Virus record (IMG/VR): IMGVR_UViG_3300037882_001770
Span: 1-64,000 of that record
DNA length: 64,000 bases
Direction: 5' to 3' (one strand)
The notes under the pieces are model-generated. The model was not told the DNA's origin, made no database searches, and saw only the letters and a list, made by a program, of their open reading frames with translations. Positions 1 to 21,927 of this stretch are shown one piece after another; within the stretch, counting starts at the first letter, position 1, and every line of letters begins with the position of its first letter. The translations under genes were made by a program, and so were the position numbers.

Positions 1-99
1 ATAATAGAAATAGGCAATGCAGTTACAAATCTTATTGATTCCAATGAAGGCTGGATTGAATTTGCTAGAGCAATACTAAAGAAAGCGAGTGAGAAATGA
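1..99 (+). CDS. 3' end of a hypothetical phage protein (partial; ...WIEFARAILKKASEK*)
   Basis: Frame open from position 1 to TGA at 97-99, overlapping ATG 96 (ATGA). Confidence 0.6.
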   Translation: MIEIGNAVTNLIDSNEGWIEFARAILKKASEK

Positions 100-281
100 C
101 AGAAAAAGAAATATTTGAGTTGTTTGATTTATATGGCACTGACATGGGTGATTACTATGAAATTGAAGTAGGTCGTATTGCACTGACCACTTACAACCTG
201 CCGTTCCAGCCTACCAAGCTGAAAAACTTTGATGAGTTTCATCAGCGTTATGGCAAGTATATCTTGCAAGCTTCGGCCTAG
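96..281 (+). CDS. hypothetical protein, 61 aa
   Basis: ORF track; ATGA coupling with upstream ORF. Confidence 0.6.
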   Translation: MTEKEIFELFDLYGTDMGDYYEIEVGRIALTTYNLPFQPTKLKNFDEFHQRYGKYILQASA

Positions 282-334
282 GAATAGGCCCGGAAGGCTG
301 TGGTCATCACAGGCTGTGTCCTCCACAGCCTTCC
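275..334 (+). promoter_or_regulatory. two adjacent RNA hairpins (possible terminator or processing structure)
   Basis: GGCCTA-GGAA-TAGGCC (275-290) and GGAAGGCTGTGG...CCACAGCCTTCC (292-303/323-334, perfect 12-bp stem). Confidence 0.5.
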
Positions 335-364
335 ACCTTTAACCAAAGATCCAAGGAGCCAAAT

Positions 365-598
365 ATGGGATTTGTAGTTTACTCCAAGAAGGACGGTGAA
401 ATGTTGCGCTACTATGACAATAGGTCAAAGGCACAAGCACAGGTCACCGGACACAATCGCAAGGCCATTATACAAGTACTCAAGGGCGATGAGTATGCAA
501 AAGAATGGGACCTATGTGAGTGGGCCGAATATGAACAGGTGTATGCTGAATATTACAACCGAAACAAGATGTATCTGCTGAGCCGGAGCAACTGGTAA
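365..598 (+). CDS. hypothetical protein, 77 aa
   Basis: AAGGAG SD upstream; TAATG coupling to next gene. Confidence 0.75.
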   Translation: MGFVVYSKKDGEMLRYYDNRSKAQAQVTGHNRKAIIQVLKGDEYAKEWDLCEWAEYEQVYAEYYNRNKMYLLSRSNW

Positions 599-939
599 TG
601 AACTATACCTTGATCCGGCTGGATCGGCGACACTCCTATCATGAACAGTTTGCCTACATGATAGAATTTCGCAAGCGACCCGATTGGGCCATTGGCGGAA
701 CTTCGGGTGTGCTAGATTTTGACCGTGTACGCAAGTGGATGAACGAAAGCTGGGGCTGGAGTCAGGATGTAGAAACTCGCACAGAAATGATCAAGGCACA
801 TCGCACCGCCAAGACCGAATCCACAGATGTAAATCGTCGCTGGGCCTGGAGTTGCAGATATCAAGAATATCGTATCTACATGGATGAAAGTGCTGTAAGC
901 CTGTTCAAACTCAAATGGAGCCAGGATGCGGTTGCCTGA
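598..939 (+). CDS. small 'LRW-family' protein
   Basis: C-terminal YMDESAVSLFKLKW; internal KWMNESWG. Confidence 0.75.
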   Translation: MNYTLIRLDRRHSYHEQFAYMIEFRKRPDWAIGGTSGVLDFDRVRKWMNESWGWSQDVETRTEMIKAHRTAKTESTDVNRRWAWSCRYQEYRIYMDESAVSLFKLKWSQDAVA

Positions 940-1144
940 TGCCGACTGGCCCTATATCTGTTATACCAGCCATCCCTATCCTGAAGTGTGTGCCTGGTGT
1001 GAACAGAATATTGGCAATTTTGATCGGGATTGGTACAAGCTGGGCGAGGATATCATGGCGCAGAGCATAATGACAGACTACAAAAGTACTTACATGTTCC
1101 GTGACCAGCGGCATGCCATGCTGTTCGAGTTGAGGTGGGCATGA
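926..1144 (+). CDS. small 'LRW-family' protein
   Basis: AWCEQNIG; ends YMFRDQRHAMLFELRWA. Confidence 0.8.
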   Translation: MRLPDADWPYICYTSHPYPEVCAWCEQNIGNFDRDWYKLGEDIMAQSIMTDYKSTYMFRDQRHAMLFELRWA

Positions 1145-1347
1145 TGGTATACAAATCTCCCGCAATGCCAGAGGCTTGGGCCTGTATGGAGTGGTGTCGG
1201 GTTCAGTTTGGTGGCGAAGGTGAACCCTACTGGGAAAAGTATGGCGGAGTTGATATTGCACATGGGTTACGCTGGTGGCGCAGACAAGGACACTTGTTTT
1301 TTTGCAATGAGAAAGATTACTTGTTATATTTGTTGAGGTGGGCATAA
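1141..1347 (+). CDS. small 'LRW-family' protein
   Basis: Start moved to ATG 1141 after GAGGTG; ends FFCNEKDYLLYLLRWA. Confidence 0.8.
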   Translation: MMVYKSPAMPEAWACMEWCRVQFGGEGEPYWEKYGGVDIAHGLRWWRRQGHLFFCNEKDYLLYLLRWA

Positions 1348-1517
1348 TGACACTCAATAAAGATCATGCAGTTTCGTGTAAAGACATAACCAACGATCAA
1401 TGGAACTGGTTGTGCAATACTATAGGAACTCCTAGAAAAGATTGGCACTATAACTTTGCACATATTTGGTTTCTTCGAGAAGAACACAAAACTCTTTGGA
1501 TGTTAAGGTGGGCATGA
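1347..1517 (+). CDS. small 'LRW-family' protein, 56 aa (not in ORF track)
   Basis: Manual translation MTLNKDHAVSCKDITNDQWNWLCNTIGTPRKDWHYNFAHIWFLREEHKTLWMLRWA; coupled on both sides. Confidence 0.8.
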   Translation: MTLNKDHAVSCKDITNDQWNWLCNTIGTPRKDWHYNFAHIWFLREEHKTLWMLRWA

Positions 1518-1867
1518 AAACCGTACGCAGAACCATTATTATCCGCGAGCGGGATTTGTTTGCGCTCATGCAAACCACCATTCGCAAGAATCTATTTGAT
1601 CGCTTTGATGTGGAACCGCTAACTTATCAGGAGATACAGAATGAAATCCTGATCAACACCCTTAAAGGTGAGACTCCGCCTCAGTACAGCACCTTGCCCA
1701 ACGTGTACGAAACTCTCATGTACAAGGAAGGCAACTTGTATAATAAACAGTATTTGTCCTGGCACCTGACCATGGACTATCCTGCTGGACAGATCTATGT
1801 GCAGAGTCGTATGAATCAACCTAGAGAACCCTTGCATCGTGTGACCTTTGAGAAGGATTATGCGTAG
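1514..1867 (+). CDS. hypothetical protein
   Basis: ATG 1514 overlaps previous TGA, SD AAGGTG. Confidence 0.65.
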   Translation: MKTVRRTIIIRERDLFALMQTTIRKNLFDRFDVEPLTYQEIQNEILINTLKGETPPQYSTLPNVYETLMYKEGNLYNKQYLSWHLTMDYPAGQIYVQSRMNQPREPLHRVTFEKDYA

Positions 1868-2102
1868 ACGATTACACGAATCTCGTTGTTTTAGACTGCA
1901 ACAAGAAACCAACCGTAAAGGTCGTAAGTTCTATCGTATTGTCTGGTGGAATTGGATTGACTTGCATGATCAAGACGAACAACTAAGAGACCTAATAGAT
2001 CCACAACGCAACAAAAGTGGAAAGAATGGTAGCAGTTGGAAGTTTAGCAATCTTAAAGAAGCAGAACAAATGTATAGTATGTTGTTGTTGAGGTGGTCAT
2101 AA
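1860..2102 (+). CDS. small 'LRW-family' protein
   Basis: AAGGA SD; ends WKFSNLKEAEQMYSMLLLRWS. Confidence 0.75.
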   Translation: MRRRLHESRCFRLQQETNRKGRKFYRIVWWNWIDLHDQDEQLRDLIDPQRNKSGKNGSSWKFSNLKEAEQMYSMLLLRWS

Positions 2103-2314
2103 TGACAAGAGTCCTAGACAAAACCTTATGGCCTTGCTGGGTTGATACCGAGTTTGTCAGTGTGGATGATTCTTTTAAGAGGCAACACTGGCTCAAAGAC
2201 AATGTTGGTGCACAACACACAGACTGGCATTTGATCAGTCCTAGCATGGGTGTTCAGCGTTGGCACTTTGCCCGTGAACAAGATGCTGTGCTATTTCAGT
2301 TGAGGTGGGCATGA
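2102..2314 (+). CDS. small 'LRW-family' protein
   Basis: HWLKDNVG; ends WHFAREQDAVLFQLRWA. Confidence 0.8.
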   Translation: MTRVLDKTLWPCWVDTEFVSVDDSFKRQHWLKDNVGAQHTDWHLISPSMGVQRWHFAREQDAVLFQLRWA

Positions 2315-2586
2315 CCGGTCAACTTGATCGACTCGAAGACGAACTTACTGAGTCACTCGGTAAAGCAATGAGTGAATCTATAGACTTCGAAGTGCTGTGC
2401 AGTGTGTATGTGCCTGAAGGTTGGACTCGAATTGAAACCAAATATGTTGCTTGCAACGAGGCAGAGTGGGCTGAAATAATTGGGTGGGTCAACAGTAATT
2501 TTACCGGTGCTTATCGAGAAAACTGTGGTGTATGGTTGATCGAACGACCCGAAGATGCTACAATGTTTATGTTGAGGTGGGTATGA
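2311..2586 (+). CDS. small 'LRW-family' protein
   Basis: GWVNSNFTG; ends WLIERPEDATMFMLRWV. Confidence 0.8.
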   Translation: MTGQLDRLEDELTESLGKAMSESIDFEVLCSVYVPEGWTRIETKYVACNEAEWAEIIGWVNSNFTGAYRENCGVWLIERPEDATMFMLRWV

Positions 2587-2960
2587 AAATTAAAGAATTT
2601 TACAACCGGTTTGAAATGCGTGTGCAAACTAGCAATCATCGTTTACGCAGAATGAAGCCGCTCCATCTCAGAACTGATGTTTGGAACACTCATCTCAGTG
2701 ACGAACTTGTATGGAACTTGACCGAGGCAGCAGAAGAAGTCGAGTGCGTGGATGTGACCATGCCTGTGGATCGGCTTAAAGAGTTAGAGAGATTCCTAAC
2801 GCACTATGAGCGAGCCGAAGACGAATGGCGCAAGCATATGAGTAAGACAGGAGAACTATTGGCACAACACCGCGAGGACGAGCGTGTTAGGATTAAGAAT
2901 CCAGCAGTTCGTCAAGCATACGAGCACTACTTAACATTATTAAACTTGTGTAGAGATTAA
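2583..2960 (+). CDS. hypothetical protein (C-terminal NPAVRQAYEHYLTLLNL helix)
   Basis: ATG 2583 overlaps previous TGA. Confidence 0.7.
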   Translation: MKIKEFYNRFEMRVQTSNHRLRRMKPLHLRTDVWNTHLSDELVWNLTEAAEEVECVDVTMPVDRLKELERFLTHYERAEDEWRKHMSKTGELLAQHREDERVRIKNPAVRQAYEHYLTLLNLCRD

Positions 2961-2961
2961 T

Positions 2962-3285
2962 ATGCAACCCTGGCAAGCCGAGATGTTGATCAAGCTCGAA
3001 CAAGGTCCGTTGACCATAAACGTAGGTCGTCAATCAGGTAAATCTGATTGGTATAAATTGTTTAGGAGTTTTATGGAAAAGCCAGCCAGCAGATTTGTGC
3101 CTTATACCTTACATCACCGGACGGGCTTGATGATACAAGACTACATGTGGTGGCATGAGAACGAGCGTGAAATTTTAAACTGGATGGCGGAACATTTGCC
3201 CCGTGGCATCGAGCATCAGCAGGGTATGACTATTACCTTTGATACGGATAAAGATCGCATGATATTCTTGCTGAGGTGGGCATAG
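2962..3285 (+). CDS. small 'LRW-family' protein
   Basis: NWMAEHLP; ends ITFDTDKDRMIFLLRWA. Confidence 0.8.
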   Translation: MQPWQAEMLIKLEQGPLTINVGRQSGKSDWYKLFRSFMEKPASRFVPYTLHHRTGLMIQDYMWWHENEREILNWMAEHLPRGIEHQQGMTITFDTDKDRMIFLLRWA

Positions 3286-3455
3286 TGTTCAAGTTCTCTC
3301 GACAATATGCTGTGTTTGGTCGCATCACAAACGATCAGTGGAACTGGTTGTGCAATAGTATTAGTCTACCGCAAAAAGAATGGACCGTGAGCAAAGGTGC
3401 TGTTTGGTTCAAACAAGAAAAACACAAAACACTTTATGTATTGAGGTGGGCATGA
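3285..3455 (+). CDS. small 'LRW-family' protein, 56 aa, GTG start (not in ORF track); paralogue of 1347-1517
   Basis: Manual translation MFKFSRQYAVFGRITNDQWNWLCNSISLPQKEWTVSKGAVWFKQEKHKTLYVLRWA. Confidence 0.8.
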   Translation: MFKFSRQYAVFGRITNDQWNWLCNSISLPQKEWTVSKGAVWFKQEKHKTLYVLRWA

Positions 3456-3715
3456 AACTCATAAGATCTACAACCACTGTAAATTATTGGAGATTCTGCG
3501 ACGGGGAGGTTCGTGATCATCCCATTATGGATCACCAGCCACGCGGTTGGTACTGTTGGGTATATCCCCGGGACGACACCGAATTTGTCACGTGGATGAA
3601 AGCCAACTGTCCCGGTGCCGAAGTCACACATAGATTCAACAACGGTAATCCCATGCATACAGTTTACATTAGTGACGATCAGGAAGCCACTGTGTTTGGC
3701 TTGAAATGGCTATGA
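3452..3715 (+). CDS. small 'LRW-family' protein
   Basis: ATG 3452; TWMKANCP; ends VYISDDQEATVFGLKWL. Confidence 0.8.
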   Translation: MKLIRSTTTVNYWRFCDGEVRDHPIMDHQPRGWYCWVYPRDDTEFVTWMKANCPGAEVTHRFNNGNPMHTVYISDDQEATVFGLKWL

Positions 3716-3894
3716 TCAAATTTAGAGGACCCCAAGGACCCTGGGAACCAGTGTTTGCGTGGAAACCGGTCAAGGATATTCACGGTAAGAGGCATTGGTT
3801 AAAACGGATTTATCGTAGAGAACTCAATCAATATGTATGGCCGCCACGAGGTTGGGAATACGGCAATGTATTTGATGTGTTACGAGACTCATGA
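3712..3894 (+). CDS. hypothetical protein
   Basis: ATGA coupling on both sides. Confidence 0.65.
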   Translation: MIKFRGPQGPWEPVFAWKPVKDIHGKRHWLKRIYRRELNQYVWPPRGWEYGNVFDVLRDS

Positions 3895-4139
3895 TCGGCA
3901 TACCGTTACTGAATCACGACGAGCGGCCCGCCTGGTGGTATCGTTTTATAGAGGACATTGTGCGTGTTCAGGATCGTCAACATCTTCCTAAATGGGAACG
4001 CTATAGTTCGTGGATTCAAGATGTCAACAGCAAGCTACAGTTGCACGGGGGTGCTATCAGACGCCTGAACAGTGGCACCTTGTTGGTAACTTTCCGATTA
4101 GATAGCAATTATACTATGTTTGTGTTAAAATATGCATAA
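3891..4139 (+). CDS. small 'LRW-family' protein
   Basis: Ends VTFRLDSNYTMFVLKYA. Confidence 0.75.
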   Translation: MIGIPLLNHDERPAWWYRFIEDIVRVQDRQHLPKWERYSSWIQDVNSKLQLHGGAIRRLNSGTLLVTFRLDSNYTMFVLKYA

Positions 4140-4360
4140 TGATTAGAGTCAGTACAGCAGATCCTGTATTCAATCGGGCATACTTAAATGCGTTCCGTGC
4201 TTTGCCGCTCGGCGATTTAGAAGGGCCCAGACAGTATGGACAGCGTTGGCGTGCGGCGTATCGGTGTAGGGTCGAAATTGGGGGTGCCGAGTGGCCTCAT
4301 TGCAGTTACGTATTTGATCGCGACGAAGACTACACTTGGTTCATGTTGCGATGGGGTTAA
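4139..4360 (+). CDS. small 'LRW-family' protein
   Basis: Ends YVFDRDEDYTWFMLRWG. Confidence 0.8.
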   Translation: MIRVSTADPVFNRAYLNAFRALPLGDLEGPRQYGQRWRAAYRCRVEIGGAEWPHCSYVFDRDEDYTWFMLRWG

Positions 4361-4563
4361 CAATACTTGTGCGGAATGCTGCAGATGCGTTAGTGTTTAA
4401 AGAGCAAGTAGAGGAGCTCTGCACCAAAAACGGCTTTACCTGGCGCTATACTCCGCAAGTAAATAACTGGTTAGGTGATGAGATTATAACTCCTGGCACA
4501 GTAGAATTTAATTTTGCAGATGAAAAAATGGCAACATACTTTCAATTACGGTGGGCTCAATGA
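4351..4563 (+). CDS. small 'LRW-family' protein
   Basis: Ends FNFADEKMATYFQLRWAQ. Confidence 0.75.
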   Translation: MGLTILVRNAADALVFKEQVEELCTKNGFTWRYTPQVNNWLGDEIITPGTVEFNFADEKMATYFQLRWAQ

Positions 4564-4865
4564 CAAGCAAAAAAACAGGAAATTATACTTCCCCTGACAA
4601 AGATGATCTTCATAGATGGTATGTGTACACGCACACCGACCCAGTAACAGGTGAAATTGTATATGTAGGCGAAGGAACCGGACAAAGATTTGCAGCGGTC
4701 AATACAAGAGATGCGCCACATTCTCAATTTCTTAAAGAAATAATCCACGATAAACAATTAGAGTGTTTTTGCATAGTCGAATCAAGACTTACTAAAGAAC
4801 AAGCGAGAGAAATTGAACGAGGATTGATTGCTAAGTACCGACCACGTTTTAATAAATTAAAATGA
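4560..4865 (+). CDS. GIY-YIG family nuclease (stand-alone domain)
   Basis: YVY...YVG...R, helix with E (AREIERGLI) and terminal FN, the order of GIY-YIG catalytic residues. Confidence 0.75.
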   Translation: MTSKKTGNYTSPDKDDLHRWYVYTHTDPVTGEIVYVGEGTGQRFAAVNTRDAPHSQFLKEIIHDKQLECFCIVESRLTKEQAREIERGLIAKYRPRFNKLK

Positions 4866-5143
4866 ACTATTATTACGAAATAGATCCTAGGTACAACGGC
4901 ACTGTGTTTGGTGACAAATGGCGCTACTGGTGCATGTATAACTGTAGTCCTGCGGACAATGGTAAGATGTGTTTTAAAACACACGACGACTTCGTGGCTC
5001 GAAGTACTCGGGTATGGTTAGAAAATCGCAACGGTGTGTATCAGGTACATCCGGCGTGGCACGGGCATCGCCGAGTAGATCCACATGAGTTTACACTAGT
5101 AAAGCTCAAAGCCAAAACAATCAAGTGGTGGCACGATGAATGA
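4862..5143 (+). CDS. hypothetical protein (possibly a divergent LRW-family member)
   Basis: Coupled ORF; DPHEFTLVKLKA weakly resembles the family motif. Confidence 0.65.
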   Translation: MNYYYEIDPRYNGTVFGDKWRYWCMYNCSPADNGKMCFKTHDDFVARSTRVWLENRNGVYQVHPAWHGHRRVDPHEFTLVKLKAKTIKWWHDE

Positions 5144-5477
5144 CAACAAAGTAAAGGTCTTGCATGACAAGTTGCGTGGGTTCAGCAATCAACTACCGGG
5201 ACAAGCCGGAGATGAATATTATGATAGTCAAGCCGCTAGATTAGATACCATCATAGGTGGCGATACCCAACACTTCTTACGCCTGCAACGGGTTAAGAAT
5301 GAATATGATGAACTGGCCAGAGCTGTGCCTGTTGGACAAGGGTTCCTGACCTTTGATGACTATGTACGAGAATACTACGGAATCAAATTGCAGTTTGATG
5401 GTGACAATGTTACACTAGCATATAGCGTTATTAATGAAAAGAAATATGTCATGTTTGTGTTAAAGTTTAACAGATAA
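5136..5477 (+). CDS. small 'LRW-family' protein
   Basis: Ends YSVINEKKYVMFVLKFNR. Confidence 0.75.
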   Translation: MNDNKVKVLHDKLRGFSNQLPGQAGDEYYDSQAARLDTIIGGDTQHFLRLQRVKNEYDELARAVPVGQGFLTFDDYVREYYGIKLQFDGDNVTLAYSVINEKKYVMFVLKFNR

Positions 5478-5725
5478 TGCACGTAAACAATTTTTCTCTT
5501 CCTAGACCATCAGACCGAGCATTAGATCAGTGTCATACGGTTTATATCAACGATCCTGCGTTTAAGATGTGGACTATGAAGAAGTTTTGTAGAGAAAACA
5601 ATTTAAGTTTGATGTGGTCAGAGTTAGTCGAAACTTCGGATGTTAGTGAGTTCTTTGATGAAGTGTGTGCGTTTTATTTTATTGATCCAGCGGATGCTAC
5701 CCTGTTTACATTGAAGTTCAAGTAA
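5477..5725 (+). CDS. small 'LRW-family' protein
   Basis: Ends FYFIDPADATLFTLKFK. Confidence 0.75.
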   Translation: MHVNNFSLPRPSDRALDQCHTVYINDPAFKMWTMKKFCRENNLSLMWSELVETSDVSEFFDEVCAFYFIDPADATLFTLKFK

Positions 5726-5792
5726 TGGCCATAGACCGTAATTCTCAATTAATTTGCTTGCAAGGCAATAAACACAGTAAAAGGACTGCCTG

Positions 5793-6110
5793 TTGAAAAT
5801 CACTGTTAAACATAAGTTAATCATATTTCATAACCCGTATGAATGGTACAACTTGGCCGAACGTTTGAGAAAAGAATACGGCCAAAGTATTATGCTGATC
5901 TCGGCAAGATGTAAACGTGAATTGGGATTTACCGTTAGGCATCACAAAGGACTGGTTCCACATGATCCAGTAGAATGGGAAGTAATGAAATCAGAAGGGT
6001 GGCACCATCGTCATCACTACGAAGACCAAGTACATTTGGATTGGTATAACGAGTCGGCGCAGACTTGGTTTGTGCTTAAATACCTTAATAATGGGCAGGT
6101 TGACCAATAA
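5793..6110 (+). CDS. small 'LRW-family' protein (TTG start)
   Basis: AAGGA SD; LDWYNESAQTWFVLKYL. Confidence 0.7.
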   Translation: MKITVKHKLIIFHNPYEWYNLAERLRKEYGQSIMLISARCKRELGFTVRHHKGLVPHDPVEWEVMKSEGWHHRHHYEDQVHLDWYNESAQTWFVLKYLNNGQVDQ

Positions 6111-6128
6111 AGGCATTTTGGCTATAAT
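6100..6128 (+). promoter_or_regulatory. sigma70-type promoter
   Basis: TTGACC (6100-6105), 17 bp, TATAAT (6123-6128). Confidence 0.75.
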
Positions 6129-6134
6129 AGTAGT

Positions 6135-6428
6135 ATGAAAATAGTTAAATTGGATCAAAGATACGCAGGCTTTCCCAAGTGGAAGTATGCTCTCCAATTT
6201 CCTTTACGCAATCACAACTATAACAAGGAATATTTCAAGTATAAAACCGTATTCCAGGCAATATATGGCCCAGATGCCGAGATAAATCCAGAGTATCATA
6301 CCGCCCAATGGGGTAGTACTCCAAAATGGTTTTATAACGAGAATTGGCATACCAGCTTCGAAAAACGGCGAATTTACTATAATGATCAACGGGTTATGAC
6401 CATGATTCAGCTTAAAATAACAGCTTGA
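6135..6428 (+). CDS. small 'LRW-family' protein (divergent)
   Basis: Ends RIYYNDQRVMTMIQLKI. Confidence 0.7.
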   Translation: MKIVKLDQRYAGFPKWKYALQFPLRNHNYNKEYFKYKTVFQAIYGPDAEINPEYHTAQWGSTPKWFYNENWHTSFEKRRIYYNDQRVMTMIQLKITA

Positions 6429-6453
6429 CCATTAATTCGTGTTATTGTATAAT
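6425..6453 (+). promoter_or_regulatory. sigma70-type promoter
   Basis: TTGACC (6425-6430), 17 bp, TATAAT (6448-6453); followed by AGTAGTAT like the 6100 promoter. Confidence 0.75.
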
Positions 6454-6482
6454 AGTAGTATAGTGAATAATAAGGACAAGTC

Positions 6483-7772
6483 ATGACAACTAGCACACAA
6501 AACAAAAAAGAATCAGACAAGTTTAAGGACTTGCTTGGCCCTACAGATCCCAAATTGGATCGCGAAATACGTGAAAAGCTGATCACAGCTCGTGTAGGAC
6601 TCTTGCTTCGTGCTAGTTTCTTTGGCAACCTGGCTACTCGACTCAAGCTGGTTAATGCCGATGAGTGGTGTCCTACTGCCGCAACCGACGGACGTCACTT
6701 TTACTACAATAGCAGATTTGTAGACATGCTCAAGCCCAAAGAGATTGAGTTCCTGTTTGGACATGAGGTCTTGCACTGTGTGTATGACCACTTTGGTCGT
6801 CGTGGTGATCGTGATCCACAACTGTTCAACATTGCCAATGACTATTGTGTAAATGGCGATTTGAAAAAACATCGTGTAGGTGAGTTTATCACTTCAGTTC
6901 CGTGCTTGTATGATGCCAAGTATGAAGGCATGAGCTCTGAAGAGATCTATGACATCTTGTATGAAAATGCGGAAAAAATCGACATTGGCAGTTTGATCGA
7001 CAAATTGCTGGATGACCACTTGGATGGCGAAGGTCAAGATGGTAGTGGTGAAGGCGACGGTGATGAAAAGAGTGGCAAAGGGTCAGGCCGTCCCAAGTTG
7101 AGTGCAGAAGAGCGTCAAAAGATCAAGGACGAAATCAAAGAAGCTGTGCTTGCGGCTGCGGCTGCCAGTGATGGTGCAGGCAACTTGCCAGCAGGTGTCA
7201 AACGCATTATTGAAGACATGACTGCACCCAAGATGAACTGGCGTGAACTGTTGCGTATGCAATTGGAAAGTACCATGAAGAGTGATTACACCTGGATGCG
7301 TAGCAGTCGCAAAGGTTGGCACATGGACGCGGTAATGCCAGGTATGAAGCTGGATCCAATGATTGATATTGCTGTGAGCTTGGATGCATCTGGATCAATT
7401 AGTGCCAAAATGCTTAACGATTTCTTGAGTGAAGTCGGCGGTATTATGGAACAGTTTCCAGCATATCGCATTCACGTGGTAACCTTTGATACTGAGTGCT
7501 ATAACCCTGTACAGTATGATAGTGAAAACTTGGATGATATCAACACTTACGAAGTCAAAGGTGGTGGTGGCACAGACTTTGATGCTGTATTTCGTTACTT
7601 TAAAGATAATGAAATTGAACCCAAGCGTCATATTATGTTTACAGACGGTTACCCATGTGGTAGCTGGGGCGATGAGATGTACTGTGACACTGTGTTTATT
7701 ATCCACGGTAGCACTAGTATTGTTCCACCATTTGGTCAATATGCTTACTACGAAGAAGAAAAAAGTCACTAA
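6483..7772 (+). CDS. putative metallopeptidase plus VWA-domain protein (DUF2201-like)
   Basis: TAATDG, HEVLH (HEXXH), acidic linker, MIDAS DASGS, GGGGTDF, FTDG. Confidence 0.85.
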   Translation: MTTSTQNKKESDKFKDLLGPTDPKLDREIREKLITARVGLLLRASFFGNLATRLKLVNADEWCPTAATDGRHFYYNSRFVDMLKPKEIEFLFGHEVLHCVYDHFGRRGDRDPQLFNIANDYCVNGDLKKHRVGEFITSVPCLYDAKYEGMSSEEIYDILYENAEKIDIGSLIDKLLDDHLDGEGQDGSGEGDGDEKSGKGSGRPKLSAEERQKIKDEIKEAVLAAAAASDGAGNLPAGVKRIIEDMTAPKMNWRELLRMQLESTMKSDYTWMRSSRKGWHMDAVMPGMKLDPMIDIAVSLDASGSISAKMLNDFLSEVGGIMEQFPAYRIHVVTFDTECYNPVQYDSENLDDINTYEVKGGGGTDFDAVFRYFKDNEIEPKRHIMFTDGYPCGSWGDEMYCDTVFIIHGSTSIVPPFGQYAYYEEEKSH

Positions 7773-7960
7773 TGCATAAAAAAATTAAACAACTTAAGTT
7801 GCAGGCTGGCATACAGGACAATCCAGATCAAGAAGGGCTAGATTTGTTTGCTGAATTGATTATACAAGAGTGTGCTCATATAGCTGACTGTCCAAGTAGT
7901 TTCAAGCACACTAACGGATACAAGATTCTTCGTTACTTTGACGTAAAGGAATTAGTATAA
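7772..7960 (+). CDS. hypothetical protein (FAELIIQEC motif)
   Basis: TAATG-coupled ORF. Confidence 0.65.
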   Translation: MHKKIKQLKLQAGIQDNPDQEGLDLFAELIIQECAHIADCPSSFKHTNGYKILRYFDVKELV

Positions 7961-8127
7961 TGAACAAGTTTAGAGCGTGGTACCTTCGTAACTATACCGA
8001 AATTACTTGGTTCCTAATTGGCTTTTTGACCTTTGCTGGATTGCAAGATCTGTCACAGGGTGATTATGTGCAAGCTGTTATCAGTTTTATTTTGGTAGCG
8101 GTGAACTGGTCATTTGCACGTCGATAA
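7960..8127 (+). CDS. small membrane protein, 55 aa (not in ORF track)
   Basis: MNKFRAWYLRNYTEITWFLIGFLTFAGLQDLSQGDYVQAVISFILVAVNWSFARR; two hydrophobic segments; TAATG coupling; followed by terminator. Confidence 0.7.
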   Translation: MNKFRAWYLRNYTEITWFLIGFLTFAGLQDLSQGDYVQAVISFILVAVNWSFARR

Positions 8128-8143
8128 GCAGGTCAGTTTAGCC

Positions 8144-8170
8144 AAAACACCCCATTTAGGGGTGTTTTTT
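8144..8170 (+). terminator. Rho-independent terminator
   Basis: AAAACACCCC-ATTTA-GGGGTGTTTT plus T-run. Confidence 0.85.
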
Positions 8171-8217
8171 ATTGTAAAAATAAATTAACAGCATGTATTT
8201 CTATTAAATATCACTGT

Positions 8218-8421
8218 ATGGAAAACAATCAAATCACAGTAACTGATCTTGTTACTATAAAGAATATCATAGATCTAGCATCTGCGCGAGGAGCATTTCG
8301 AGCAGGCGAAATGAAAGAAGTTGGCGAAGTGTATGAAAAACTTACGCAATTTTTAGAAGCAGTAATAGCGCAGGCACAGGCCGCCAATGGCACCGAGCCT
8401 GACCAAACCCAAGGAGAATAA
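8218..8421 (+). CDS. hypothetical protein
   Basis: ORF preceded by TAAATA. Confidence 0.7.
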   Translation: MENNQITVTDLVTIKNIIDLASARGAFRAGEMKEVGEVYEKLTQFLEAVIAQAQAANGTEPDQTQGE

Positions 8422-8422
8422 A

Positions 8423-9127
8423 ATGGCATTTATGAAACACGTAGGTAAACATAGCGATCGTAGCATTGCTTTGTTATTTAGACAAGTACCAGGCGAGGAC
8501 CATATGTGCTTGCTCATCTATCCAGAAGTGTTACCAGCACACTGGCACGATGCAATCATGAAAGTATTAGAAAGCGATGTTGGTCAACAAGCAGAAGAGT
8601 TTGCAGAAGCATTGAGCCGTAGCCTGTTGCCGGACGGTCGTGTGATTCTTAACACCTTGCATCAAGAAAAGATGATCAAAAAAGTTCGTACCAGCGATGT
8701 TATCATGACTCCTAATTCGGGTGCTAGAATTCGCCTCGATGAACTTAACAAAATGTTAAACGAAATGAAACTTGGTGCAGATGCTATCAAAAAGATGGCG
8801 GAAAATGATGCGGCTCGTGGCCTAGTTGACGCACCTACCAAACGTGCCGCCGAAGCAGAATTCAAAGCTGGTCGTCAAGCTCCTGTACAAGCTCCACAGA
8901 ATGGTGCATTAAGTGATCGCGATATTGCAGCTAACATGTTGACCCAAGCACAACGCATGGAAATTGAAGCCAAGGGCATGATTGCCGAAGCCGCACGTAT
9001 GAAAAAAGACGCCGAGCGTATGCACCCAGGTGTAATTGCAAACGATTCTTCATCAACCTCTGCTACTACTGCACCCAAGCGCGGTCGTCCAGCTAAAGCT
9101 AAGGCGGTAGCGGATGCAGCTCAATGA
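8423..9127 (+). CDS. hypothetical phage protein with coiled coil and basic C-terminal tail
   Basis: AAGGAG SD, ATG 8423 (MAFMKHVG...); C-terminal PKRGRPAK (AT-hook-like). Confidence 0.75.
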   Translation: MAFMKHVGKHSDRSIALLFRQVPGEDHMCLLIYPEVLPAHWHDAIMKVLESDVGQQAEEFAEALSRSLLPDGRVILNTLHQEKMIKKVRTSDVIMTPNSGARIRLDELNKMLNEMKLGADAIKKMAENDAARGLVDAPTKRAAEAEFKAGRQAPVQAPQNGALSDRDIAANMLTQAQRMEIEAKGMIAEAARMKKDAERMHPGVIANDSSSTSATTAPKRGRPAKAKAVADAAQ

Positions 9128-10113: not shown

Positions 10114-10449
10114 ATGGCCATTGCAAATACACATCGATCAGAAGATGCCACTCGTTTATTTAAAGCACCCGAGTATAAACTCATCAATGATAAAGTAGTA
10201 AAATTTAACGATGTCAAGGTGCACGAATTTAATATGGGAGATGTAGAGGACCCTGACTTGTATGCGGCAGAGCCATTATGGCAGTGGCAACAAACAGAAG
10301 CCGGAAAATGGGTCATGTCTCATGCAGTAGAAACTCCCTTCTGGCATCGCATAGTGAATCCATACACTTTTGGTTATACTTACTACGTGATTGCTCGGCT
10401 TTGCGAGCAGGATCAAACATACTGGACACTTAAATGGCAAAAATCTTAG
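10114..10449 (+). CDS. LRW-family-like protein heading the sugar operon
   Basis: Ends ARLCEQDQTYWTLKW; KWVMSHA helix. Confidence 0.7.
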   Translation: MAIANTHRSEDATRLFKAPEYKLINDKVVKFNDVKVHEFNMGDVEDPDLYAAEPLWQWQQTEAGKWVMSHAVETPFWHRIVNPYTFGYTYYVIARLCEQDQTYWTLKWQKS

Positions 10450-17894: not shown

Positions 17895-19067
17895 TTATTT
17901 TGTAAACTCTGGCCACAATGCGTCAAACGACAGGCCAGGTGGCGGCATTGTTTGTTCTTGCCGAGCGTGCCATTGTGCCAGCTGTGCCACAGAAGTAATG
18001 TTAATCGCTGGCAGTGCCAATTGAGCACGATATCGTTTTAATATATCCAGACTTAATCGATATGTGTTAGCCGGATCGCTTTCGTATTTTGCCAACACAA
18101 GATCAATTTCTTCTTGCGCACGAGTTTTTAGTACGTTGGGCAATTTGCGAACATCCAGCACCGGCGGATCTATCAAATCGCACCAGTATATTTCAATATT
18201 ATAAAGTCGACAGAACTCAAAATAATCAACTAGATCAAATGCACAGTAGATAGAATAAGCAGGATGTGCTACTATGTGTTGTTGATCGTCTTTCATTAGT
18301 TGTAGATTACGTTTGAATATTTCCCAACTTGCACCACGTCTGACGTACTCGAACTTGGCTGGATCTGCATTGTCAAAACTAATTTGCCAGGCCACACTGG
18401 GCCATTTACGTAGTTCTTGATAGATGGCATTTTTAGTCAGATCTATACTTAAATTAGTAGTAACAACTACCTTGGCCTGAGTAGAATCAATCTCTTTGAG
18501 AAATTCCAATAATCCTGGCTGCAACAACGGCTCGCCACCGCCGAGAGTTAATCCTATTAGGCTATCACGATTGTCCTTGGCCAGTTGTATTAAATCATCT
18601 GATTTGTTACGCACATGGGTAATTGGAATTTTTTTTATGTGTTGCCATGCAGTACTAGTTTCTGGATTACAGTAGGTACAAGTTAAATTACATAAATTAG
18701 TCCAACATACCGTAAGATTAATTAGTTTAAAAAAGTTGATGTCTAGATCAATTTGATCCATTAGGTTAGCTGGTATGCGCCGAGTCAGTCTGGCACTATT
18801 CCCGCCCGTTGATTCGTTGTGTTGGCAGCTTTGGCAAAAGCTGTGCCATTCGCCTTGTGCTATAGTTTCTTTAAGTTCTTTTAATGTTGGGCCATTGATA
18901 ATAGATTGTATGCTTTGTTGTTTGATTGATCCTAGCGAGTTTTGTTTGTTATTCAGATAGTTCCAACCATAGCTATGTAGGCACGGCAATACTTGTCCTG
19001 TTTGATCTATATTCAACGTAGTCCACGGCTCTGGACAAAATGTTGGGCTCTTTGTTATTTTAGACAT
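17895..19067 (-). CDS. radical SAM protein with N-terminal twitch/SPASM-like domain
   Basis: FCPEPW..PC..CQSC; CNLTCTYC; GGEP. Confidence 0.9.
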   Translation of the reverse strand: MSKITKSPTFCPEPWTTLNIDQTGQVLPCLHSYGWNYLNNKQNSLGSIKQQSIQSIINGPTLKELKETIAQGEWHSFCQSCQHNESTGGNSARLTRRIPANLMDQIDLDINFFKLINLTVCWTNLCNLTCTYCNPETSTAWQHIKKIPITHVRNKSDDLIQLAKDNRDSLIGLTLGGGEPLLQPGLLEFLKEIDSTQAKVVVTTNLSIDLTKNAIYQELRKWPSVAWQISFDNADPAKFEYVRRGASWEIFKRNLQLMKDDQQHIVAHPAYSIYCAFDLVDYFEFCRLYNIEIYWCDLIDPPVLDVRKLPNVLKTRAQEEIDLVLAKYESDPANTYRLSLDILKRYRAQLALPAINITSVAQLAQWHARQEQTMPPPGLSFDALWPEFTK

Positions 19068-19764
19068 TGTTTCCTGATAGATAATCGTGTATTTTTTTTG
19101 CTACGTATTTGTGCCCGTCAACTGACATGTGGCCTCCGGGACAGACTGGAATGTGCTCGGTCCATGTTAACATGTGTTCGTGTGGGAACCCAGGATAATT
19201 TTTGACTTGAATTAAATTTTCAAATTTATTTAAACGGGCAAATACCCCGGGGTAAAACCAAGTTTCGCAACTGTTGATAAACAGATATTTTTGACCTATT
19301 GTTCTAAAATGATTTTGCAGAGCAATTACCTGTGCAAACTGTTTATCAAATTGATGGTTATCATCGTAATGATGCTTAATATAATCATTTAACCACGGCA
19401 TGCGTTTTAATAACACCAGGCTGTTGACCGTAAACGGTAAATCCTTGCCCTGGTAAAATAAGTCAAATCGAGGCATTGCGGTCCATGCACATATTACTAA
19501 ACTATATTGTTGATCTACAGTTTCTGTCATGGCCATGCGAAAGATTCGATCATTGCTGCCGCCTATCAGACTGAGATTAACAACCGGCGTGTTTTGAAGT
19601 TTTCCAAGCAGCTCTGGCCAAGCCAATTGGCTAGGAGCAAGCGGCAGTATTTGTGCGACTCGATTATCAAAATATTCATTTCCTAACTCAGTGGTCACCG
19701 TAGCAGGTACGTCGGGCAATTCTAACCCAAATGAATTGCTGTCACCTATTACTAATATAGTCAT
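19060..19764 (-). CDS. SGNH/GDSL-like protein
   Basis: GDSNSFG, GGSNDRI, terminal GGH...GH. Confidence 0.7.
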   Translation of the reverse strand: MTILVIGDSNSFGLELPDVPATVTTELGNEYFDNRVAQILPLAPSQLAWPELLGKLQNTPVVNLSLIGGSNDRIFRMAMTETVDQQYSLVICAWTAMPRFDLFYQGKDLPFTVNSLVLLKRMPWLNDYIKHHYDDNHQFDKQFAQVIALQNHFRTIGQKYLFINSCETWFYPGVFARLNKFENLIQVKNYPGFPHEHMLTWTEHIPVCPGGHMSVDGHKYVAKKIHDYLSGNNV

Positions 19765-20324
19765 GCACGGTTGTACCTAAGATATACGCTATTGCGTTGC
19801 ATGCCAGGAGGAACTGGTGTTGCTAATCCATGCAATACCTGTCCTGGCTTTTCAAAAAAATATCCAAAGTTATTTCGATAAGGGAGTTGTAATAGTATTT
19901 TGTCTGGGGTTTGATATATTGTAGTGCCCAATATTGGACCATTCCATTTTGCAGATTCTCGAGACATGTATATTTGTACTGCGTAATCAAAAAAATCAGG
20001 ATCCTGGTGTGGACTGATAGTGTATCCTTCAAAGTCGGCCCAAAGACTTATTCCTGCAGGGATGACCGGCCTCCCCAACATGCCGTTAATTTCTTTTAAT
20101 ATTTCAGAGCTAGCAGCGTAAGATACTATTTGATCGACAATCTTGCTTTTTCCTCGATACAAACGTCGACCTGCGCGATGACTAAAAACTTCAGTATCGG
20201 GCCAATCTGTGTCATCTATATTGTCAAATATAGAGAGTACTTGTTCTGCTAATTCTGCGGTAAAAAAATTATCTAGTAGATAAATGTTGGACTGTCCTAG
20301 ATAATTGATTACTGTATTCTTCAT
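19761..20324 (-). CDS. 2OG-Fe(II) oxygenase
   Basis: HQD...H...RxS arrangement (PHQD, VLHG, RNS). Confidence 0.75.
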   Translation of the reverse strand: MKNTVINYLGQSNIYLLDNFFTAELAEQVLSIFDNIDDTDWPDTEVFSHRAGRRLYRGKSKIVDQIVSYAASSEILKEINGMLGRPVIPAGISLWADFEGYTISPHQDPDFFDYAVQIYMSRESAKWNGPILGTTIYQTPDKILLQLPYRNNFGYFFEKPGQVLHGLATPVPPGMQRNSVYLRYNRA

Positions 20325-21829
20325 TAGCTACAAACCTTTACACCATATTCTTTCTCAAAACGATCTGCATCTGCGCGGTCATTAACCATGGGCTCTCCAC
20401 GTATGTTAAGACTAGTGTTTAAAAGCATAGGACATCCTGTTTCTTTGTACCACGCTTCGAGTAATCTTCTAATGCCTGAGCCATTATCTGCAACCGTTTG
20501 AATTCGGCTAGTACCATCCACATGACAGATAGCAGGAAATAAATCAGGACGGCGACAATGGGCGACAATTTGCATATAACTGCTATCACTCCAGCCCCGG
20601 GGCATAATAAAAAATTCATCCACATGCTCTGCCAGGATAACCGGTGCAAACGGTCTAAACTTTTGTCTACGCTTGATTTCATTTACTCGATCCTTTATAT
20701 CCACTCCTCGGGGGTCGGCAAGGAGACTTCTATTTCCCAGTGCTCTGGGTCCAAACTCGGCTCGACCACTAGCGACACCGACGATTCTATCACGGAGTAA
20801 ACAATCAACAAGGGCATGGACAGGATATTCTCCTGAGATGTTATGGCCAAGGTACGCATCTCGCCAGTTAACTCGTTTTCCGTAGGCCAGTGCGGCAGCA
20901 CCAAGACTGCTACCAGCGTCGCCAGGGCAAGGCATGATCCAAATGTTTTCAAAGTATTCACCGAGTTTTCTATTAGCAAGACAATTCAACGCCACGCCGC
21001 CCATGTACACTAGATTCGAACTCCAGTTAAACTCCTGAGCACGTTGCATAACACTATATATCAATTCTTCTGCCACCGATTGTGCAGCTCCGGCAATATC
21101 TTCATTGGATACGCCATACATAAATTCTTTTTCTACACCCAAGTGTAGATTTTCTTTAAATTTAAGTTCTTGTACATCGTCTACCAAATGATGTTTCATT
21201 GGGTGGGCATACACATTGCCATGAGTACTGTATGCACTCATGCCCATGGTAATATATTCTTCATCCATTGGATGCAGGCCAATTCGTTGAGTCATTGCAC
21301 TATAAAAAAGTCCAATAGAGTGTGGATATCGTTGTCTCCATAGTCGTTTGTAGATTGCGTGACCCGATCCAGTGTATTCTGCGCCCCAAATGCTAATAGT
21401 ATCAAACTCACCAATTGCATCAATTACTACCACAGTGGCACGTTCATATGGACTGGTTTGAAATCCGGCAGCTGCATGACTCAAATGGTGCGGATAACAT
21501 ACTTCATGTTCGGCCGAATTTGGATACCATGCACCAAGATGTTGAGTCAATGCGCCACGCACAGTCCACGGACCAAATTTATTTTGTCTGGTATATAGCT
21601 GTTGTAAATTGTGCATCCATGGGCGCTCATACCAGGCCACAGTATCAAACTGCCACGGGCATAGTTGTGAAACAAACTCGTCACAAAAATTACTATCATT
21701 TTTAATTTTACTGTAGCGTTCACTGTGTCCAGCAAACTCTATGTCGCCGTGACTGTTAATAACCGTGGCTGCGGCATCGTGATATCCTGCACTTAATCCT
21801 AGGGTGTACTTGACTGGCGCTCGTTTCAT
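20324..21829 (-). CDS. carbamoyltransferase (NodU/CmcH family)
   Basis: HDAAA, HHLSHAA, GGVALNC, GDAG, EFGPRALGNRS, FRPFAP, LLNTSLN. Confidence 0.95.
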   Translation of the reverse strand: MKRAPVKYTLGLSAGYHDAAATVINSHGDIEFAGHSERYSKIKNDSNFCDEFVSQLCPWQFDTVAWYERPWMHNLQQLYTRQNKFGPWTVRGALTQHLGAWYPNSAEHEVCYPHHLSHAAAGFQTSPYERATVVVIDAIGEFDTISIWGAEYTGSGHAIYKRLWRQRYPHSIGLFYSAMTQRIGLHPMDEEYITMGMSAYSTHGNVYAHPMKHHLVDDVQELKFKENLHLGVEKEFMYGVSNEDIAGAAQSVAEELIYSVMQRAQEFNWSSNLVYMGGVALNCLANRKLGEYFENIWIMPCPGDAGSSLGAAALAYGKRVNWRDAYLGHNISGEYPVHALVDCLLRDRIVGVASGRAEFGPRALGNRSLLADPRGVDIKDRVNEIKRRQKFRPFAPVILAEHVDEFFIMPRGWSDSSYMQIVAHCRRPDLFPAICHVDGTSRIQTVADNGSGIRRLLEAWYKETGCPMLLNTSLNIRGEPMVNDRADADRFEKEYGVKVCS

Positions 21830-21927
21830 TTATAGATAAACGGATCCCGTTTGCGTAGTTCTTTAAGTTTCTTACGATAGCGTATTTCTAATCGAATACG
21901 GCTGATTAAATTTTTAATCCATTTCAT
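21826..21927 (-). CDS. 33-aa basic peptide ending DPFIYK (not in ORF track)
   Basis: MKWIKNLISRIRLEIRYRKKLKELRKRDPFIYK; ATGA overlap on both sides, fills the gap exactly. Confidence 0.8.
   Translation of the reverse strand: MKWIKNLISRIRLEIRYRKKLKELRKRDPFIYK

What the first reader, a model, noticed from the sequence alone, without database searches (positions are those of the whole stretch)
598..6428. Tandem array of at least 17 divergent small paralogues sharing a C-terminal F-x-L-[RK]-W motif
Seen: ORFs at 598, 926, 1141, 1347, 1860, 2102, 2311, 2962, 3285, 3452, 3891, 4139, 4351, 5136, 5477, 5793 and 6135 end in approximately aromatic-x-F-x-[DN]-E-x-D-[AY]-x-x-F-x-L-[RK]-[WYF]. Many also carry a W-[CLM]-x-x-[NH]-x-[GP] helix, while the rest is hypervariable. 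Inference: one small alpha/beta fold with a conserved terminal helix and a variable surface, expanded as a repertoire, for example adaptors, anti-defence or host-takeover factors binding a common partner. I know of no assigned function for it.
Basis: partly seen in the sequence, partly recalled or inferred. Interest (0 to 1): 0.8.

Follow-up and report, generated by a model that had tools for sequence, protein, structure and literature searches.

The report
Tandem array of small phage paralogues
A jumbo phage from an environmental sample carries about 17 back-to-back genes for diverged copies of one tiny, undescribed protein domain; the last codons of each copy also provide the ribosome-binding site or start codon of the next gene, and what the proteins do is still unknown.

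Summary
Between 598 and 6428 (+ strand), 16 of the 17 named ORFs end in [FLWYIM]-x-L-[RK]-[WYF], against 3 of 594 other ORFs in the window (Fisher p 2.5e-20). Fourteen or fifteen are statistically supported members, 5793 and 1860 are probable, and 6135 is doubtful. An 18th member lies at 10114-10449.

It is a real protein family, not an RBS by-product. AlphaFold gives confident models of two members (pLDDT 87 and 89) with the same beta-alpha-beta-beta-alpha core of about 50 residues. Orthologues evolve at dN/dS 0.06-0.23. A profile search finds about 167 more clusters of small phage proteins with the domain at the extreme C-terminus.

The RBS idea is still half right. The motif Arg is AGG in 8 of 10 cases (background 2.4%), forming GAGG five bases before the next ATG.

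The array fills a variable hotspot between the MoxR-type ATPase and the vWA-metallopeptidase genes. Relatives carry 0 to more than 20 copies, and whole genes come and go at the start/stop overlaps. Pfam, PHROGs, NCBIfam, PDB and Foldseek gave no match. Cultured phages Phosso and Atu_ph07 carry members annotated as hypothetical.

The function is inferred only: a repertoire of small binding modules for host takeover or counter-defence.

The parts
96..281 (+). Last ~61 codons of the MoxR-type AAA+ ATPase gene; left boundary of the hotspot
   Evidence: tblastn of the intact 361-aa ATPase of L001 matches window 60-278; the last 36 aa are identical to L003
292..334 (+). Stable hairpin with a perfect 12-bp stem, between the ATPase end and the array
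   Evidence: Sequence; folding gives -34 kcal/mol, z -3.7; no T-run follows
365..598 (+). 77-aa ORF, not a demonstrable member
   Evidence: hhalign P 0.04, the same as controls
598..939 (+). Member with an N-terminal extension; a core member kept in 51 of 82 related loci
   Evidence: hhalign P 8e-6; conservation
926..1144 (+). Member (72 aa)
   Evidence: Leave-one-out E 1e-4; ends LRWA with an AGG codon and an ATGA overlap
1141..1347 (+). Member (68 aa)
   Evidence: Leave-one-out E 2e-3; junction TAATG
1347..1517 (+). Minimal member (56 aa), the bare domain
   Evidence: AF2 pLDDT 87.3, strands 8-10, 33-36, 39-42 and helices 16-26, 45-55
1514..1867 (+). 117-aa ORF inside the array, not a member
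   Evidence: hhalign P 0.06; has 79% orthologues in L003 and L018
1860..2102 (+). Probable member with a short insertion before the last helix
   Evidence: Regex hit; leave-one-out weak, E 0.34; orthologue in L003 hit at 7e-5 by an HMM that had this ORF in its training set
2102..2314 (+). Member (70 aa)
   Evidence: Leave-one-out E 7e-6; its 3' end is shared with an unrelated body in L018
2311..2586 (+). Member (91 aa) with an acidic helical N-terminal module
   Evidence: Leave-one-out E 1.5e-5; exact loss of this gene in a metagenome contig (joint 2310 to 2583)
2583..2960 (+). 125-aa ORF inside the array, not a member
   Evidence: hhalign P 0.54
2962..3285 (+). Member (107 aa)
   Evidence: Leave-one-out E 0.011; family HMM hit
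3285..3455 (+). Minimal member (56 aa, GTG start), 60% identical to 1347-1517
   Evidence: Leave-one-out E 5e-6; orthologues P0001, P0004, P0005
3452..3715 (+). Member (87 aa); its K-W codons contain the ATG of the next gene
   Evidence: Family HMM hit; leave-one-out E 0.054; junction
3706..3894 (+). 62-aa ORF, not a member
   Evidence: hhalign P 0.13; replaced in two metagenome contigs (joint 3715 to 3907)
3891..4139 (+). Member (82 aa), ends LKYA
   Evidence: Leave-one-out E 2.5e-3
4139..4360 (+). Member (73 aa); CGA TGG supplies the next start codon
   Evidence: Leave-one-out E 2e-7; orthologues in 16 loci
4351..4563 (+). Member (70 aa)
   Evidence: Leave-one-out E 6e-5
4560..4865 (+). 101-aa ORF with weak GIY-YIG likeness, an insertion private to this genome
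   Evidence: Pfam GIY-YIG E 0.011, below cut-off; no orthologue in 82 loci; precisely absent in L016
4862..5143 (+). 93-aa ORF, possible very divergent member
   Evidence: hhalign P 4e-3; orthologues in 23 loci
5136..5477 (+). Member (113 aa), domain in residues 57-112
   Evidence: hhalign P 1e-6
5477..5725 (+). Member (82 aa), ends LKFK
   Evidence: Leave-one-out E 6e-5
5793..6110 (+). Probable member (TTG start, 105 aa); a core gene kept in 62 of 82 loci
   Evidence: AF2 pLDDT 88.7: an N-terminal extension, then strand 45-55, helix 58-66, strands 73-83, helix 86-97; hhalign P 3e-3
6100..6128 (+). Sigma-70-like promoter, 11 of 12 consensus positions, copy 1
   Evidence: the extended pattern occurs only twice in 64 kb
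6135..6428 (+). Doubtful member (97 aa), flanked by the two promoter copies
   Evidence: Leave-one-out fails, E 18; hhalign P 6e-4; orthologues in only 2 loci
6425..6453 (+). Same promoter, copy 2, in front of the vWA gene
6483..7772 (+). Metallopeptidase-vWA protein (DUF2201_N + DUF2201); right boundary of the hotspot
   Evidence: phrog_1314 E 2e-106; the two Pfam domains are recorded for the orthologues
10114..10449 (+). Outlying 18th member, between thyX and an epimerase gene; kept in 70 of 82 loci
   Evidence: HMM E 5e-3; hhalign P 3e-5; ORF

Best explanation
Shown. The region is a tightly packed, same-strand array of 15-18 old paralogues of one phage-specific domain of about 50 residues (beta-alpha-beta-beta-alpha) that always forms the extreme C-terminus of a small protein. 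The array lies in a variable hotspot between the MoxR-type AAA+ ATPase gene and the vWA-metallopeptidase gene of an uncultured jumbo T4-like myovirus. The conserved Trp, Phe and Leu residues and the E-x-D-A cap of the last helix look like fold core, while surfaces, charge and N-terminal extensions differ between copies. Each copy is under purifying selection. The final codons do double duty. L-R-W-x-stop written as TTG AGG TGG NNA TGA places GAGG five bases before the next ATG. Alternatively NNA TGG itself holds that ATG. Every cassette therefore carries the translation start signal for whatever follows it, and whole genes are gained and lost at these junctions.

Inferred. This self-contained junction makes duplicated or shuffled cassettes immediately expressible, which would explain why the family forms tandem arrays in all seven loci examined outside this clade. 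The proteins are most likely small non-enzymatic binding modules, each aimed at a different target during host takeover or counter-defence.
For: Family and fold.

Phage-only spread and C-terminal position: 169 hits at E<=1e-3, of which two (P0138, P0212) are repeat artefacts and nearly all the rest are 43-128 aa with the match ending at the C-terminus. Foldseek against BFVD finds about 20 uncultured-phage proteins. Atlas clusters are viral.

Strand control: 183 HMM hits in 83 loci, all on the + strand.

Purifying selection: dN/dS 0.06-0.23, against 0.07 for the neighbouring vWA gene.

Dual coding: AGG is used for 8 of 10 motif Arg codons, against 2.4% of Arg codons in the large genes and 4 of 95 in the array gene bodies. 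In 132 dereplicated members elsewhere, AGG accounts for 28 of 33 Arg codons when the ATG lies 8 or 11 nt on, and CGA for 5 of 5 when the ATG sits inside CGATGG. In 123 of 132 the next start lies within 20 nt.

Hotspot and copy-number variation.

Junction-bounded indels: and joints 2310 to 2583, 1513 to 4139 and 1865 to 2108.

Arrays elsewhere: L087, L090, L091, L092, Phosso.

Non-enzymatic guess: the only conserved polar residues are helix caps and one basic residue, and pI varies from 4.2 to 10.2.
Against: No functional evidence of any kind was obtained: no homologue of known function, no solved structure, no expression data (no RNA run was listed), and no partner.

No promoter was found at the head of the array, so early timing is assumed.

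dS is saturated in most pairs, so the dN/dS values are rough.

Recombination inside the conserved 3' end is documented in only 3 of 68 informative pairs. Junction-bounded indels could equally reflect selection against broken genes.

The only hint of an anti-defence neighbourhood is a precomputed Gad2 label in L091, which was not reproduced.
Confidence: 0.5

Rival explanations
1. The shared ending is only a by-product of the ribosome-binding site embedded in each gene's 3' end, and the ORFs are otherwise unrelated.
For: The junction really is an SD plus start/stop overlap, and codon choice follows it.
Against: Similarity extends over about 45 residues, including an invariant Trp 34 residues upstream. 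Two members have the same predicted core. Lys variants (AAA or AAG) keep a basic-aromatic ending without forming an SD. In L087 three paralogues keep nearly identical 17-residue tails despite many synonymous differences.
Confidence: 0.02
2. The proteins are accessory subunits, adaptors or substrates of the flanking MoxR ATPase / vWA-metallopeptidase machine. The conserved C-terminal helix would dock on that common partner and the variable part would select clients.
For: The array sits exactly between the two genes. The best-kept members (598 and 5793) lie towards its two ends. Phosso and Atu_ph07 have members 0.2-4 kb downstream of the vWA gene. An unrelated 2.9-kb contig again links members to a DUF2201 gene.
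Against: L025 and L058, with a 76-78% identical vWA protein, have the ATPase and vWA genes adjacent with no array, as does Phosso. Phosso also has a five-gene run 200 kb away from the pair. Arrays in L090-L092 show no such neighbour on the sequence available. The one VMAP Pfam hit has E 0.16.
Confidence: 0.15
3. They are nucleic-acid-binding regulators, for example a set of specific transcription or translation factors, like the roughly 35-copy zinc-ribbon expansion proposed for Bacillus phage G.
For: The fold is a small alpha/beta unit whose noise-level Foldseek neighbours are RRM, P-II and E2-type domains. There is a precedent in PMC7824862.
Against: All those matches have E of about 1 or more and TM below 0.5. 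Many members are strongly acidic (pI 4.2-4.9) and the median pI is 6.1. No conserved basic patch was seen beyond a single Arg/Lys.
Confidence: 0.1
4. They co-assemble through the conserved helix into a hetero-oligomeric structure, or are packaged virion or internal proteins.
For: Translational coupling favours balanced synthesis. Eight of the eleven positions of the last helix are conserved.
Against: Copy number ranges from 0 to more than 20 among close relatives, which is hard to reconcile with a fixed assembly. The array lies in a replication/metabolism neighbourhood, not with the structural genes at 35-64 kb.
Confidence: 0.07

Closest known systems
Lineage-specific expansions in jumbo phages, e.g. 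the roughly 35 zinc-ribbon genes of Bacillus phage G (Iyer et al. 2021, PMC7824862)
   Same: One small domain is multiplied to tens of copies in a jumbo phage, with function only guessed.
   Different: This is a different domain with no metal ligands, strictly tandem and translationally coupled, in group 2.2-type T4-like phages. It is not mentioned in that survey, which does describe the flanking MoxR-vWA pair.
Hyperplastic regions and promoter/stem-loop (PeSL) cassettes of T4-type phages (Arbiol et al. 2010, recalled from memory, not read here)
   Same: Small accessory ORFs between conserved genes, with cassette-wise gain and loss among relatives. ORF 6135 is flanked by two copies of one promoter.
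   Different: In the rest of the array the repeated junction is not a promoter. It is the coding 3' end of the preceding paralogue, which doubles as SD or start codon. The cassettes are also homologous to each other.
Genomic accordions and multigene families of large eukaryotic DNA viruses (reviewed in PMC13359090)
   Same: A gene family expands and contracts between close relatives and is thought to track host defences.
   Different: The copies here are old: dS is saturated and each has its own orthologues. They are not recent identical amplifications.
Polyimmunity loci: tandem arrays of diversified immunity-protein paralogues in bacteria (Zhang, Iyer and Aravind 2011, from memory)
   Same: The architecture is a run of diverged small paralogues with a common scaffold and variable surfaces.
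   Different: There is no sequence or fold relationship, these arrays are phage-borne, and no toxin partner is known.
Host-takeover module of Bacillus phage SPO1 (from memory)
   Same: A block of about two dozen small genes with strong translation signals.
   Different: The SPO1 genes are not paralogues of one another.

Membership tests
The undescribed C-terminal F-x-L-[RK]-W domain family itself | Profile match over about 45 residues, including the invariant Trp of helix 1 and the F-x-x-E-x-D-A-x-x-F-x-L-[RK]-W block | tested here: met
   12 of 17 by leave-one-out; 598, 5136 and 10114 by hhalign; 1860 and 5793 probable, 6135 doubtful
The undescribed C-terminal F-x-L-[RK]-W domain family itself | Shared beta-alpha-beta-beta-alpha fold | tested here: met
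   AF2 models of 1347 (pLDDT 87.3) and 5793 (88.7) show the same order of elements. Coordinates could not be superposed with the tools at hand.
Any curated protein family (Pfam, PHROGs, NCBIfam, PADLOC) | Score above the family threshold | tested here: not met
   No consistent hit for window members or for 138 relatives
Ferredoxin-like small domains (ACT, RRM, P-II, CutA) | Significant structural match | tested here: not met
   Best PDB E 0.7-1, TM below 0.5; Atlas P-II TM 0.48; PDB sequence profile search gives nothing
vWA-MoxR associated proteins (VMAP) | Match to a VMAP model and obligate linkage to the MoxR-vWA pair | tested here: not met
   A single hit at E 0.16; the pair exists without the array in L025, L058 and Phosso
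PeSL-type mobile regulatory cassettes | A repeated early promoter (with or without stem-loop) flanking each small ORF | tested here: inconclusive
   Met for ORF 6135 only; no such repeats between the other cassettes
Known anti-defence proteins | Homology to, or tested inhibition of, a defence system | not testable with these tools
   No dedicated anti-defence library was available. Pfam models of such proteins gave no hit. The Gad2 neighbour label in L091 was not reproduced.
GIY-YIG homing endonuclease (ORF 4560-4865 only) | GIY-YIG catalytic domain above threshold | tested here: inconclusive
   E 0.011, 16.4 bits against a cut-off of 22.6; the presence/absence pattern fits a mobile insertion

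The most novel reading that the evidence does not exclude
The family is a set of interchangeable adaptors for the flanking AAA+ ATPase and vWA-metallopeptidase. The invariant C-terminal helix would plug into that machine, and each variable face would capture a different host protein, for instance an immune effector, for unfolding or cleavage. That would make it a phage-encoded, cassette-programmable targeted-proteolysis system.
Probability: 0.07. Interest if true: 0.9.

Novelty: new member of a known kind. Interest (0 to 1): 0.55.

Why it matters
The family is large, phage-restricted and absent from every curated library searched. It has a confident predicted fold with no solved relative, and it forms tandem arrays in all seven loci examined outside this clade. 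That makes it a clean target for a new domain definition and for anti-defence or host-takeover screens.

Two cultured jumbo phages with tractable hosts, Sinorhizobium phage Phosso and Agrobacterium phage Atu_ph07, carry members, so the question can be tested directly.

The junction shows how one helix end can encode both fold core and the translation signal of the next gene. This offers a simple explanation for why some phage gene families grow as arrays.

Tried and rejected
- **Near-identical DNA in GenBank phages:** none.
- **tblastn of single members against isolates:** only chance hits for 2311. P0150 gave the first lead to Phosso.
- **Pfam, PHROGs, NCBIfam and PADLOC:** nothing, on window members and on 138 relatives.
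- **PDB, by profile and by Foldseek, for two models:** nothing significant.
- **ESM Atlas:** only viral hypothetical clusters.
- **RNA evidence:** no RNA run was listed. The two DNA runs hold only relatives, which were useful for joints but not for expression.
- **Rfam on 1-8500:** no match.
- **T4 late promoter TATAAATA:** absent.
- **First hhalign run:** it was accidentally global and was discarded and repeated in local mode.
- **False positives of the profile search:** P0138 (1674 aa, Ig-like repeats) and P0212, both repeat artefacts.
- **Gene conversion as the cause of identical tails in L087:** rejected, because synonymous sites differ.
- **Frequent recombination inside the 3' block:** not supported, only 3 of 68 pairs.
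- **ORF 1514-1867 as a frameshifted member:** examined in three frames and not supported.

Full report
**Source and setting.** The window is bases 1-64000 of the 317,493-bp contig IMGVR_UViG_3300037882_001770. Its large genes mark it as a T4-like jumbo myovirus. The 1143-aa baseplate wedge protein is about 34% identical to those of Sinorhizobium phage Phosso, Agrobacterium phage Atu_ph07, GAP32 and CBB. No GenBank phage is close at the DNA level. ORF 6483-7772 is the metallopeptidase-vWA protein (DUF2201_N + DUF2201). Iyer et al. (PMC7824862) describe this protein, together with a MoxR AAA+ ATPase, as typical of group 2.2 jumbo phages. In relatives the 361-aa ATPase gene lies upstream of the small-gene block. 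In the window only its last ~61 codons are seen, at 96-281 next to the contig start. The array is therefore bounded on both sides.

**The observation.**
- All 17 ORFs exist and align without gaps over their last ~17 residues.
- The five-residue ending occurs in 16 of 32 + strand ORFs of the array, against 3 of 594 ORFs elsewhere (p 2.5e-20).
- A leave-one-out HMM of the terminal 20 residues recovers 12 of 17 at E<0.02.
- Profile-profile comparison with a family alignment that excludes them supports 598, 5136 and the outlying 10114-10449. It gives intermediate values for 6135, 5793 and 4862, and control-level values for the five other ORFs of the block (365, 1514, 2583, 3706) and for neighbouring genes.
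- My count is 14-15 firm members, 2 probable (1860, 5793), 1 doubtful (6135), 1 possible extra (4862) and 1 outlier (10114).

**A real protein family.** A profile of the 17 was searched against 1.84 billion representatives. It found 169 hits at E<=1e-3. Two are repeat artefacts. Nearly all the rest are 43-128 aa, with the match ending at their C-terminus.

In the resulting 138-sequence alignment the conserved positions are:
- a Tyr in strand 1;
- W-[CL]-x-x-[NH]-hydrophobic-G at the end of helix 1;
- a Trp in strand 2;
- [FIY]-[YW]-F in strand 3;
- E-x-D-A-T-[LM]-F-x-L-[RK]-W in helix 2.

AlphaFold2 models the 56-residue member 1347 at pLDDT 87.3 as strand-helix-strand-strand-helix. It models the 104-residue member 5793 at pLDDT 88.7 as an N-terminal extension followed by the same order of elements. 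Foldseek finds no solved relative (best E 0.7-1, TM below 0.5). In BFVD it finds about 20 uncharacterised proteins of uncultured phages at TM 0.54-0.75. A sequence profile search of the PDB and the ESM Atlas add nothing. Pfam, PHROGs, NCBIfam and PADLOC have no model for the family.

Orthologue comparisons give dN/dS of 0.06-0.23, like the neighbouring vWA gene. dS is mostly saturated, so these values are rough. All 183 HMM hits in 83 loci lie on the coding strand and none on the other.

**The junction is dual-coded.**
- In the window the motif Arg is AGG in 8 of 10 cases. AGG makes up 2.4% of Arg codons in the large genes and 4 of 95 in the array gene bodies.
- These are exactly the cases where the next ATG overlaps or abuts the stop (ATGA or TAATG), so that GAGG lies five bases before the start.
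- In 132 dereplicated members from other loci, AGG accounts for 28 of 33 Arg codons when the ATG lies 8 or 11 nt downstream. CGA accounts for 5 of 5 when the ATG sits inside CGATGG.
- In 21 of 132 the next start codon lies inside the [RK]-W codons, and in 123 of 132 a start lies within 20 nt. In the window this holds for ORF 3706 and for the epimerase gene after the outlying member.
- Lys variants keep the basic-aromatic ending without forming an SD. Three paralogues in L087 keep almost the same 17-residue tail despite many synonymous differences. The peptide itself is therefore selected.

**Evolution of the array.** Loci with a 70-94% identical vWA protein carry from 0 to more than 20 members between the ATPase and vWA genes:
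- none in L025 and L058;
- 5 in L001;
- 9 in L020;
- 17 or more in L018;
- 17-21 in L003.

Three members are widely kept: 598 in 51 loci, 5793 in 62 and 10114 in 70. The others are patchy, and 3452 has no orthologue in the set. Gene order is largely colinear, with some moves.

DNA homology blocks between the window and its relatives end at gene boundaries. Metagenome contigs from two other runs show whole-gene differences with joints at the overlaps: 2310 to 2583 removes ORF 2311, 1865 to 2108 removes ORF 1860, and 1513 to 4139 joins two distant cassettes.

One clear mosaic exists. ORF 2102 and an unrelated gene body in L018 share their last 12 residues and 37 nt at 97% identity. Such pairs are rare, 3 of 68. 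Frequent recombination in the conserved 3' block is therefore possible but not shown.

The copies are old paralogues with their own orthologues. They are not a fresh amplification.

**Distribution.**
- Independent short contigs L087, L090, L091 and L092 consist almost entirely of tandem members.
- Phosso has a run of five at 369.5-371.0 kb and further members near its vWA gene.
- Atu_ph07 has at least two members downstream of its vWA gene.
- All of these are annotated as hypothetical.
- PA5oct, which shares the ATPase-vWA pair, showed no member in the 25 kb examined.

**Expression signals.**
- No strong promoter precedes the array.
- A stable hairpin without a T-run lies at 292-334.
- A sigma-70-like promoter occurs twice, flanking ORF 6135.
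- No terminator-like site stands out within the array, and terminator-like matches in 1-8500 are no more frequent than in shuffled sequence.
- The block most likely reads as one translationally coupled transcript. Its timing is unknown, and no RNA run was listed.

**Function.** Nothing here measures function. The inference of small non-enzymatic binding modules rests on five points:
- the core-type conservation pattern;
- the wide spread of charge (pI 4.2-10.2);
- the variable N-terminal extensions;
- purifying selection on each copy;
- presence/absence variation among close relatives in a non-structural region.

The position between the ATPase and the vWA-peptidase keeps the adaptor or client idea alive. 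Relatives that have the pair without the array, and arrays that lie elsewhere, argue against an obligate link. A precomputed Gad2 label on a neighbour in L091 was not reproduced and carries little weight.

**Verdict.** This is an undescribed, widespread phage domain family in a known kind of arrangement, with a neat dual-coded junction. Interest is moderate, 0.55.

Noticed in passing
window 1-281: Only the last ~36 residues of the MoxR-type ATPase are conserved here. Upstream of 96 the ATPase frame has several stops, and another ORF ends at 96. The gene may be split by an insertion, or the contig end may be chimeric.
   Followed up: partly
window 292-334: Perfect 12-bp inverted repeat that forms a -34 kcal/mol hairpin (z -3.7) between the ATPase end and the array. 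No T-run follows, so it could be an attenuator or a processing or stability element.
   Followed up: partly
window 6100-6128 and 6425-6453: Two copies of one promoter-like sequence flank ORF 6135. In the first copy the ATG lies 7 nt after the -10 box, which would give a leaderless mRNA. This looks like a promoter-bounded cassette insertion.
   Followed up: partly
window 4560-4865: ORF with weak GIY-YIG likeness and no orthologue in 82 related loci. It is precisely absent in L016, which suggests a free-standing homing-endonuclease-like insertion.
   Followed up: partly
window 17895-30739 (- strand): Run of at least five radical-SAM-like genes plus a NolO-like carbamoyltransferase (20324-21829): a large biosynthetic-looking cluster.
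   Followed up: no
window 37747-52530 (- strand): A single ORF of 4927 aa lies directly upstream of the baseplate wedge gene.
   Followed up: no
whole window: The T4 late-promoter octamer TATAAATA is absent from 64 kb (4.5 expected by shuffling).
   Followed up: no
window 2311-2586; P0002; P0139; L003 10380-10697: The same acidic helical N-terminal module (E-x-x-x-S-L-G-K-x-M...D-F) is joined to different versions of the C-terminal domain, which suggests shuffling between extension and core.
   Followed up: no
P0176 (147 aa, metagenome): One protein carries two copies of the domain in tandem, the only fusion seen. No fusion to any other domain was found.
   Followed up: no
L091 1367-1960: A neighbour of an 11-member array carries a precomputed Pfam label Gad2 (an anti-Gabija protein). 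My own Pfam scan gave no hit.
   Followed up: partly
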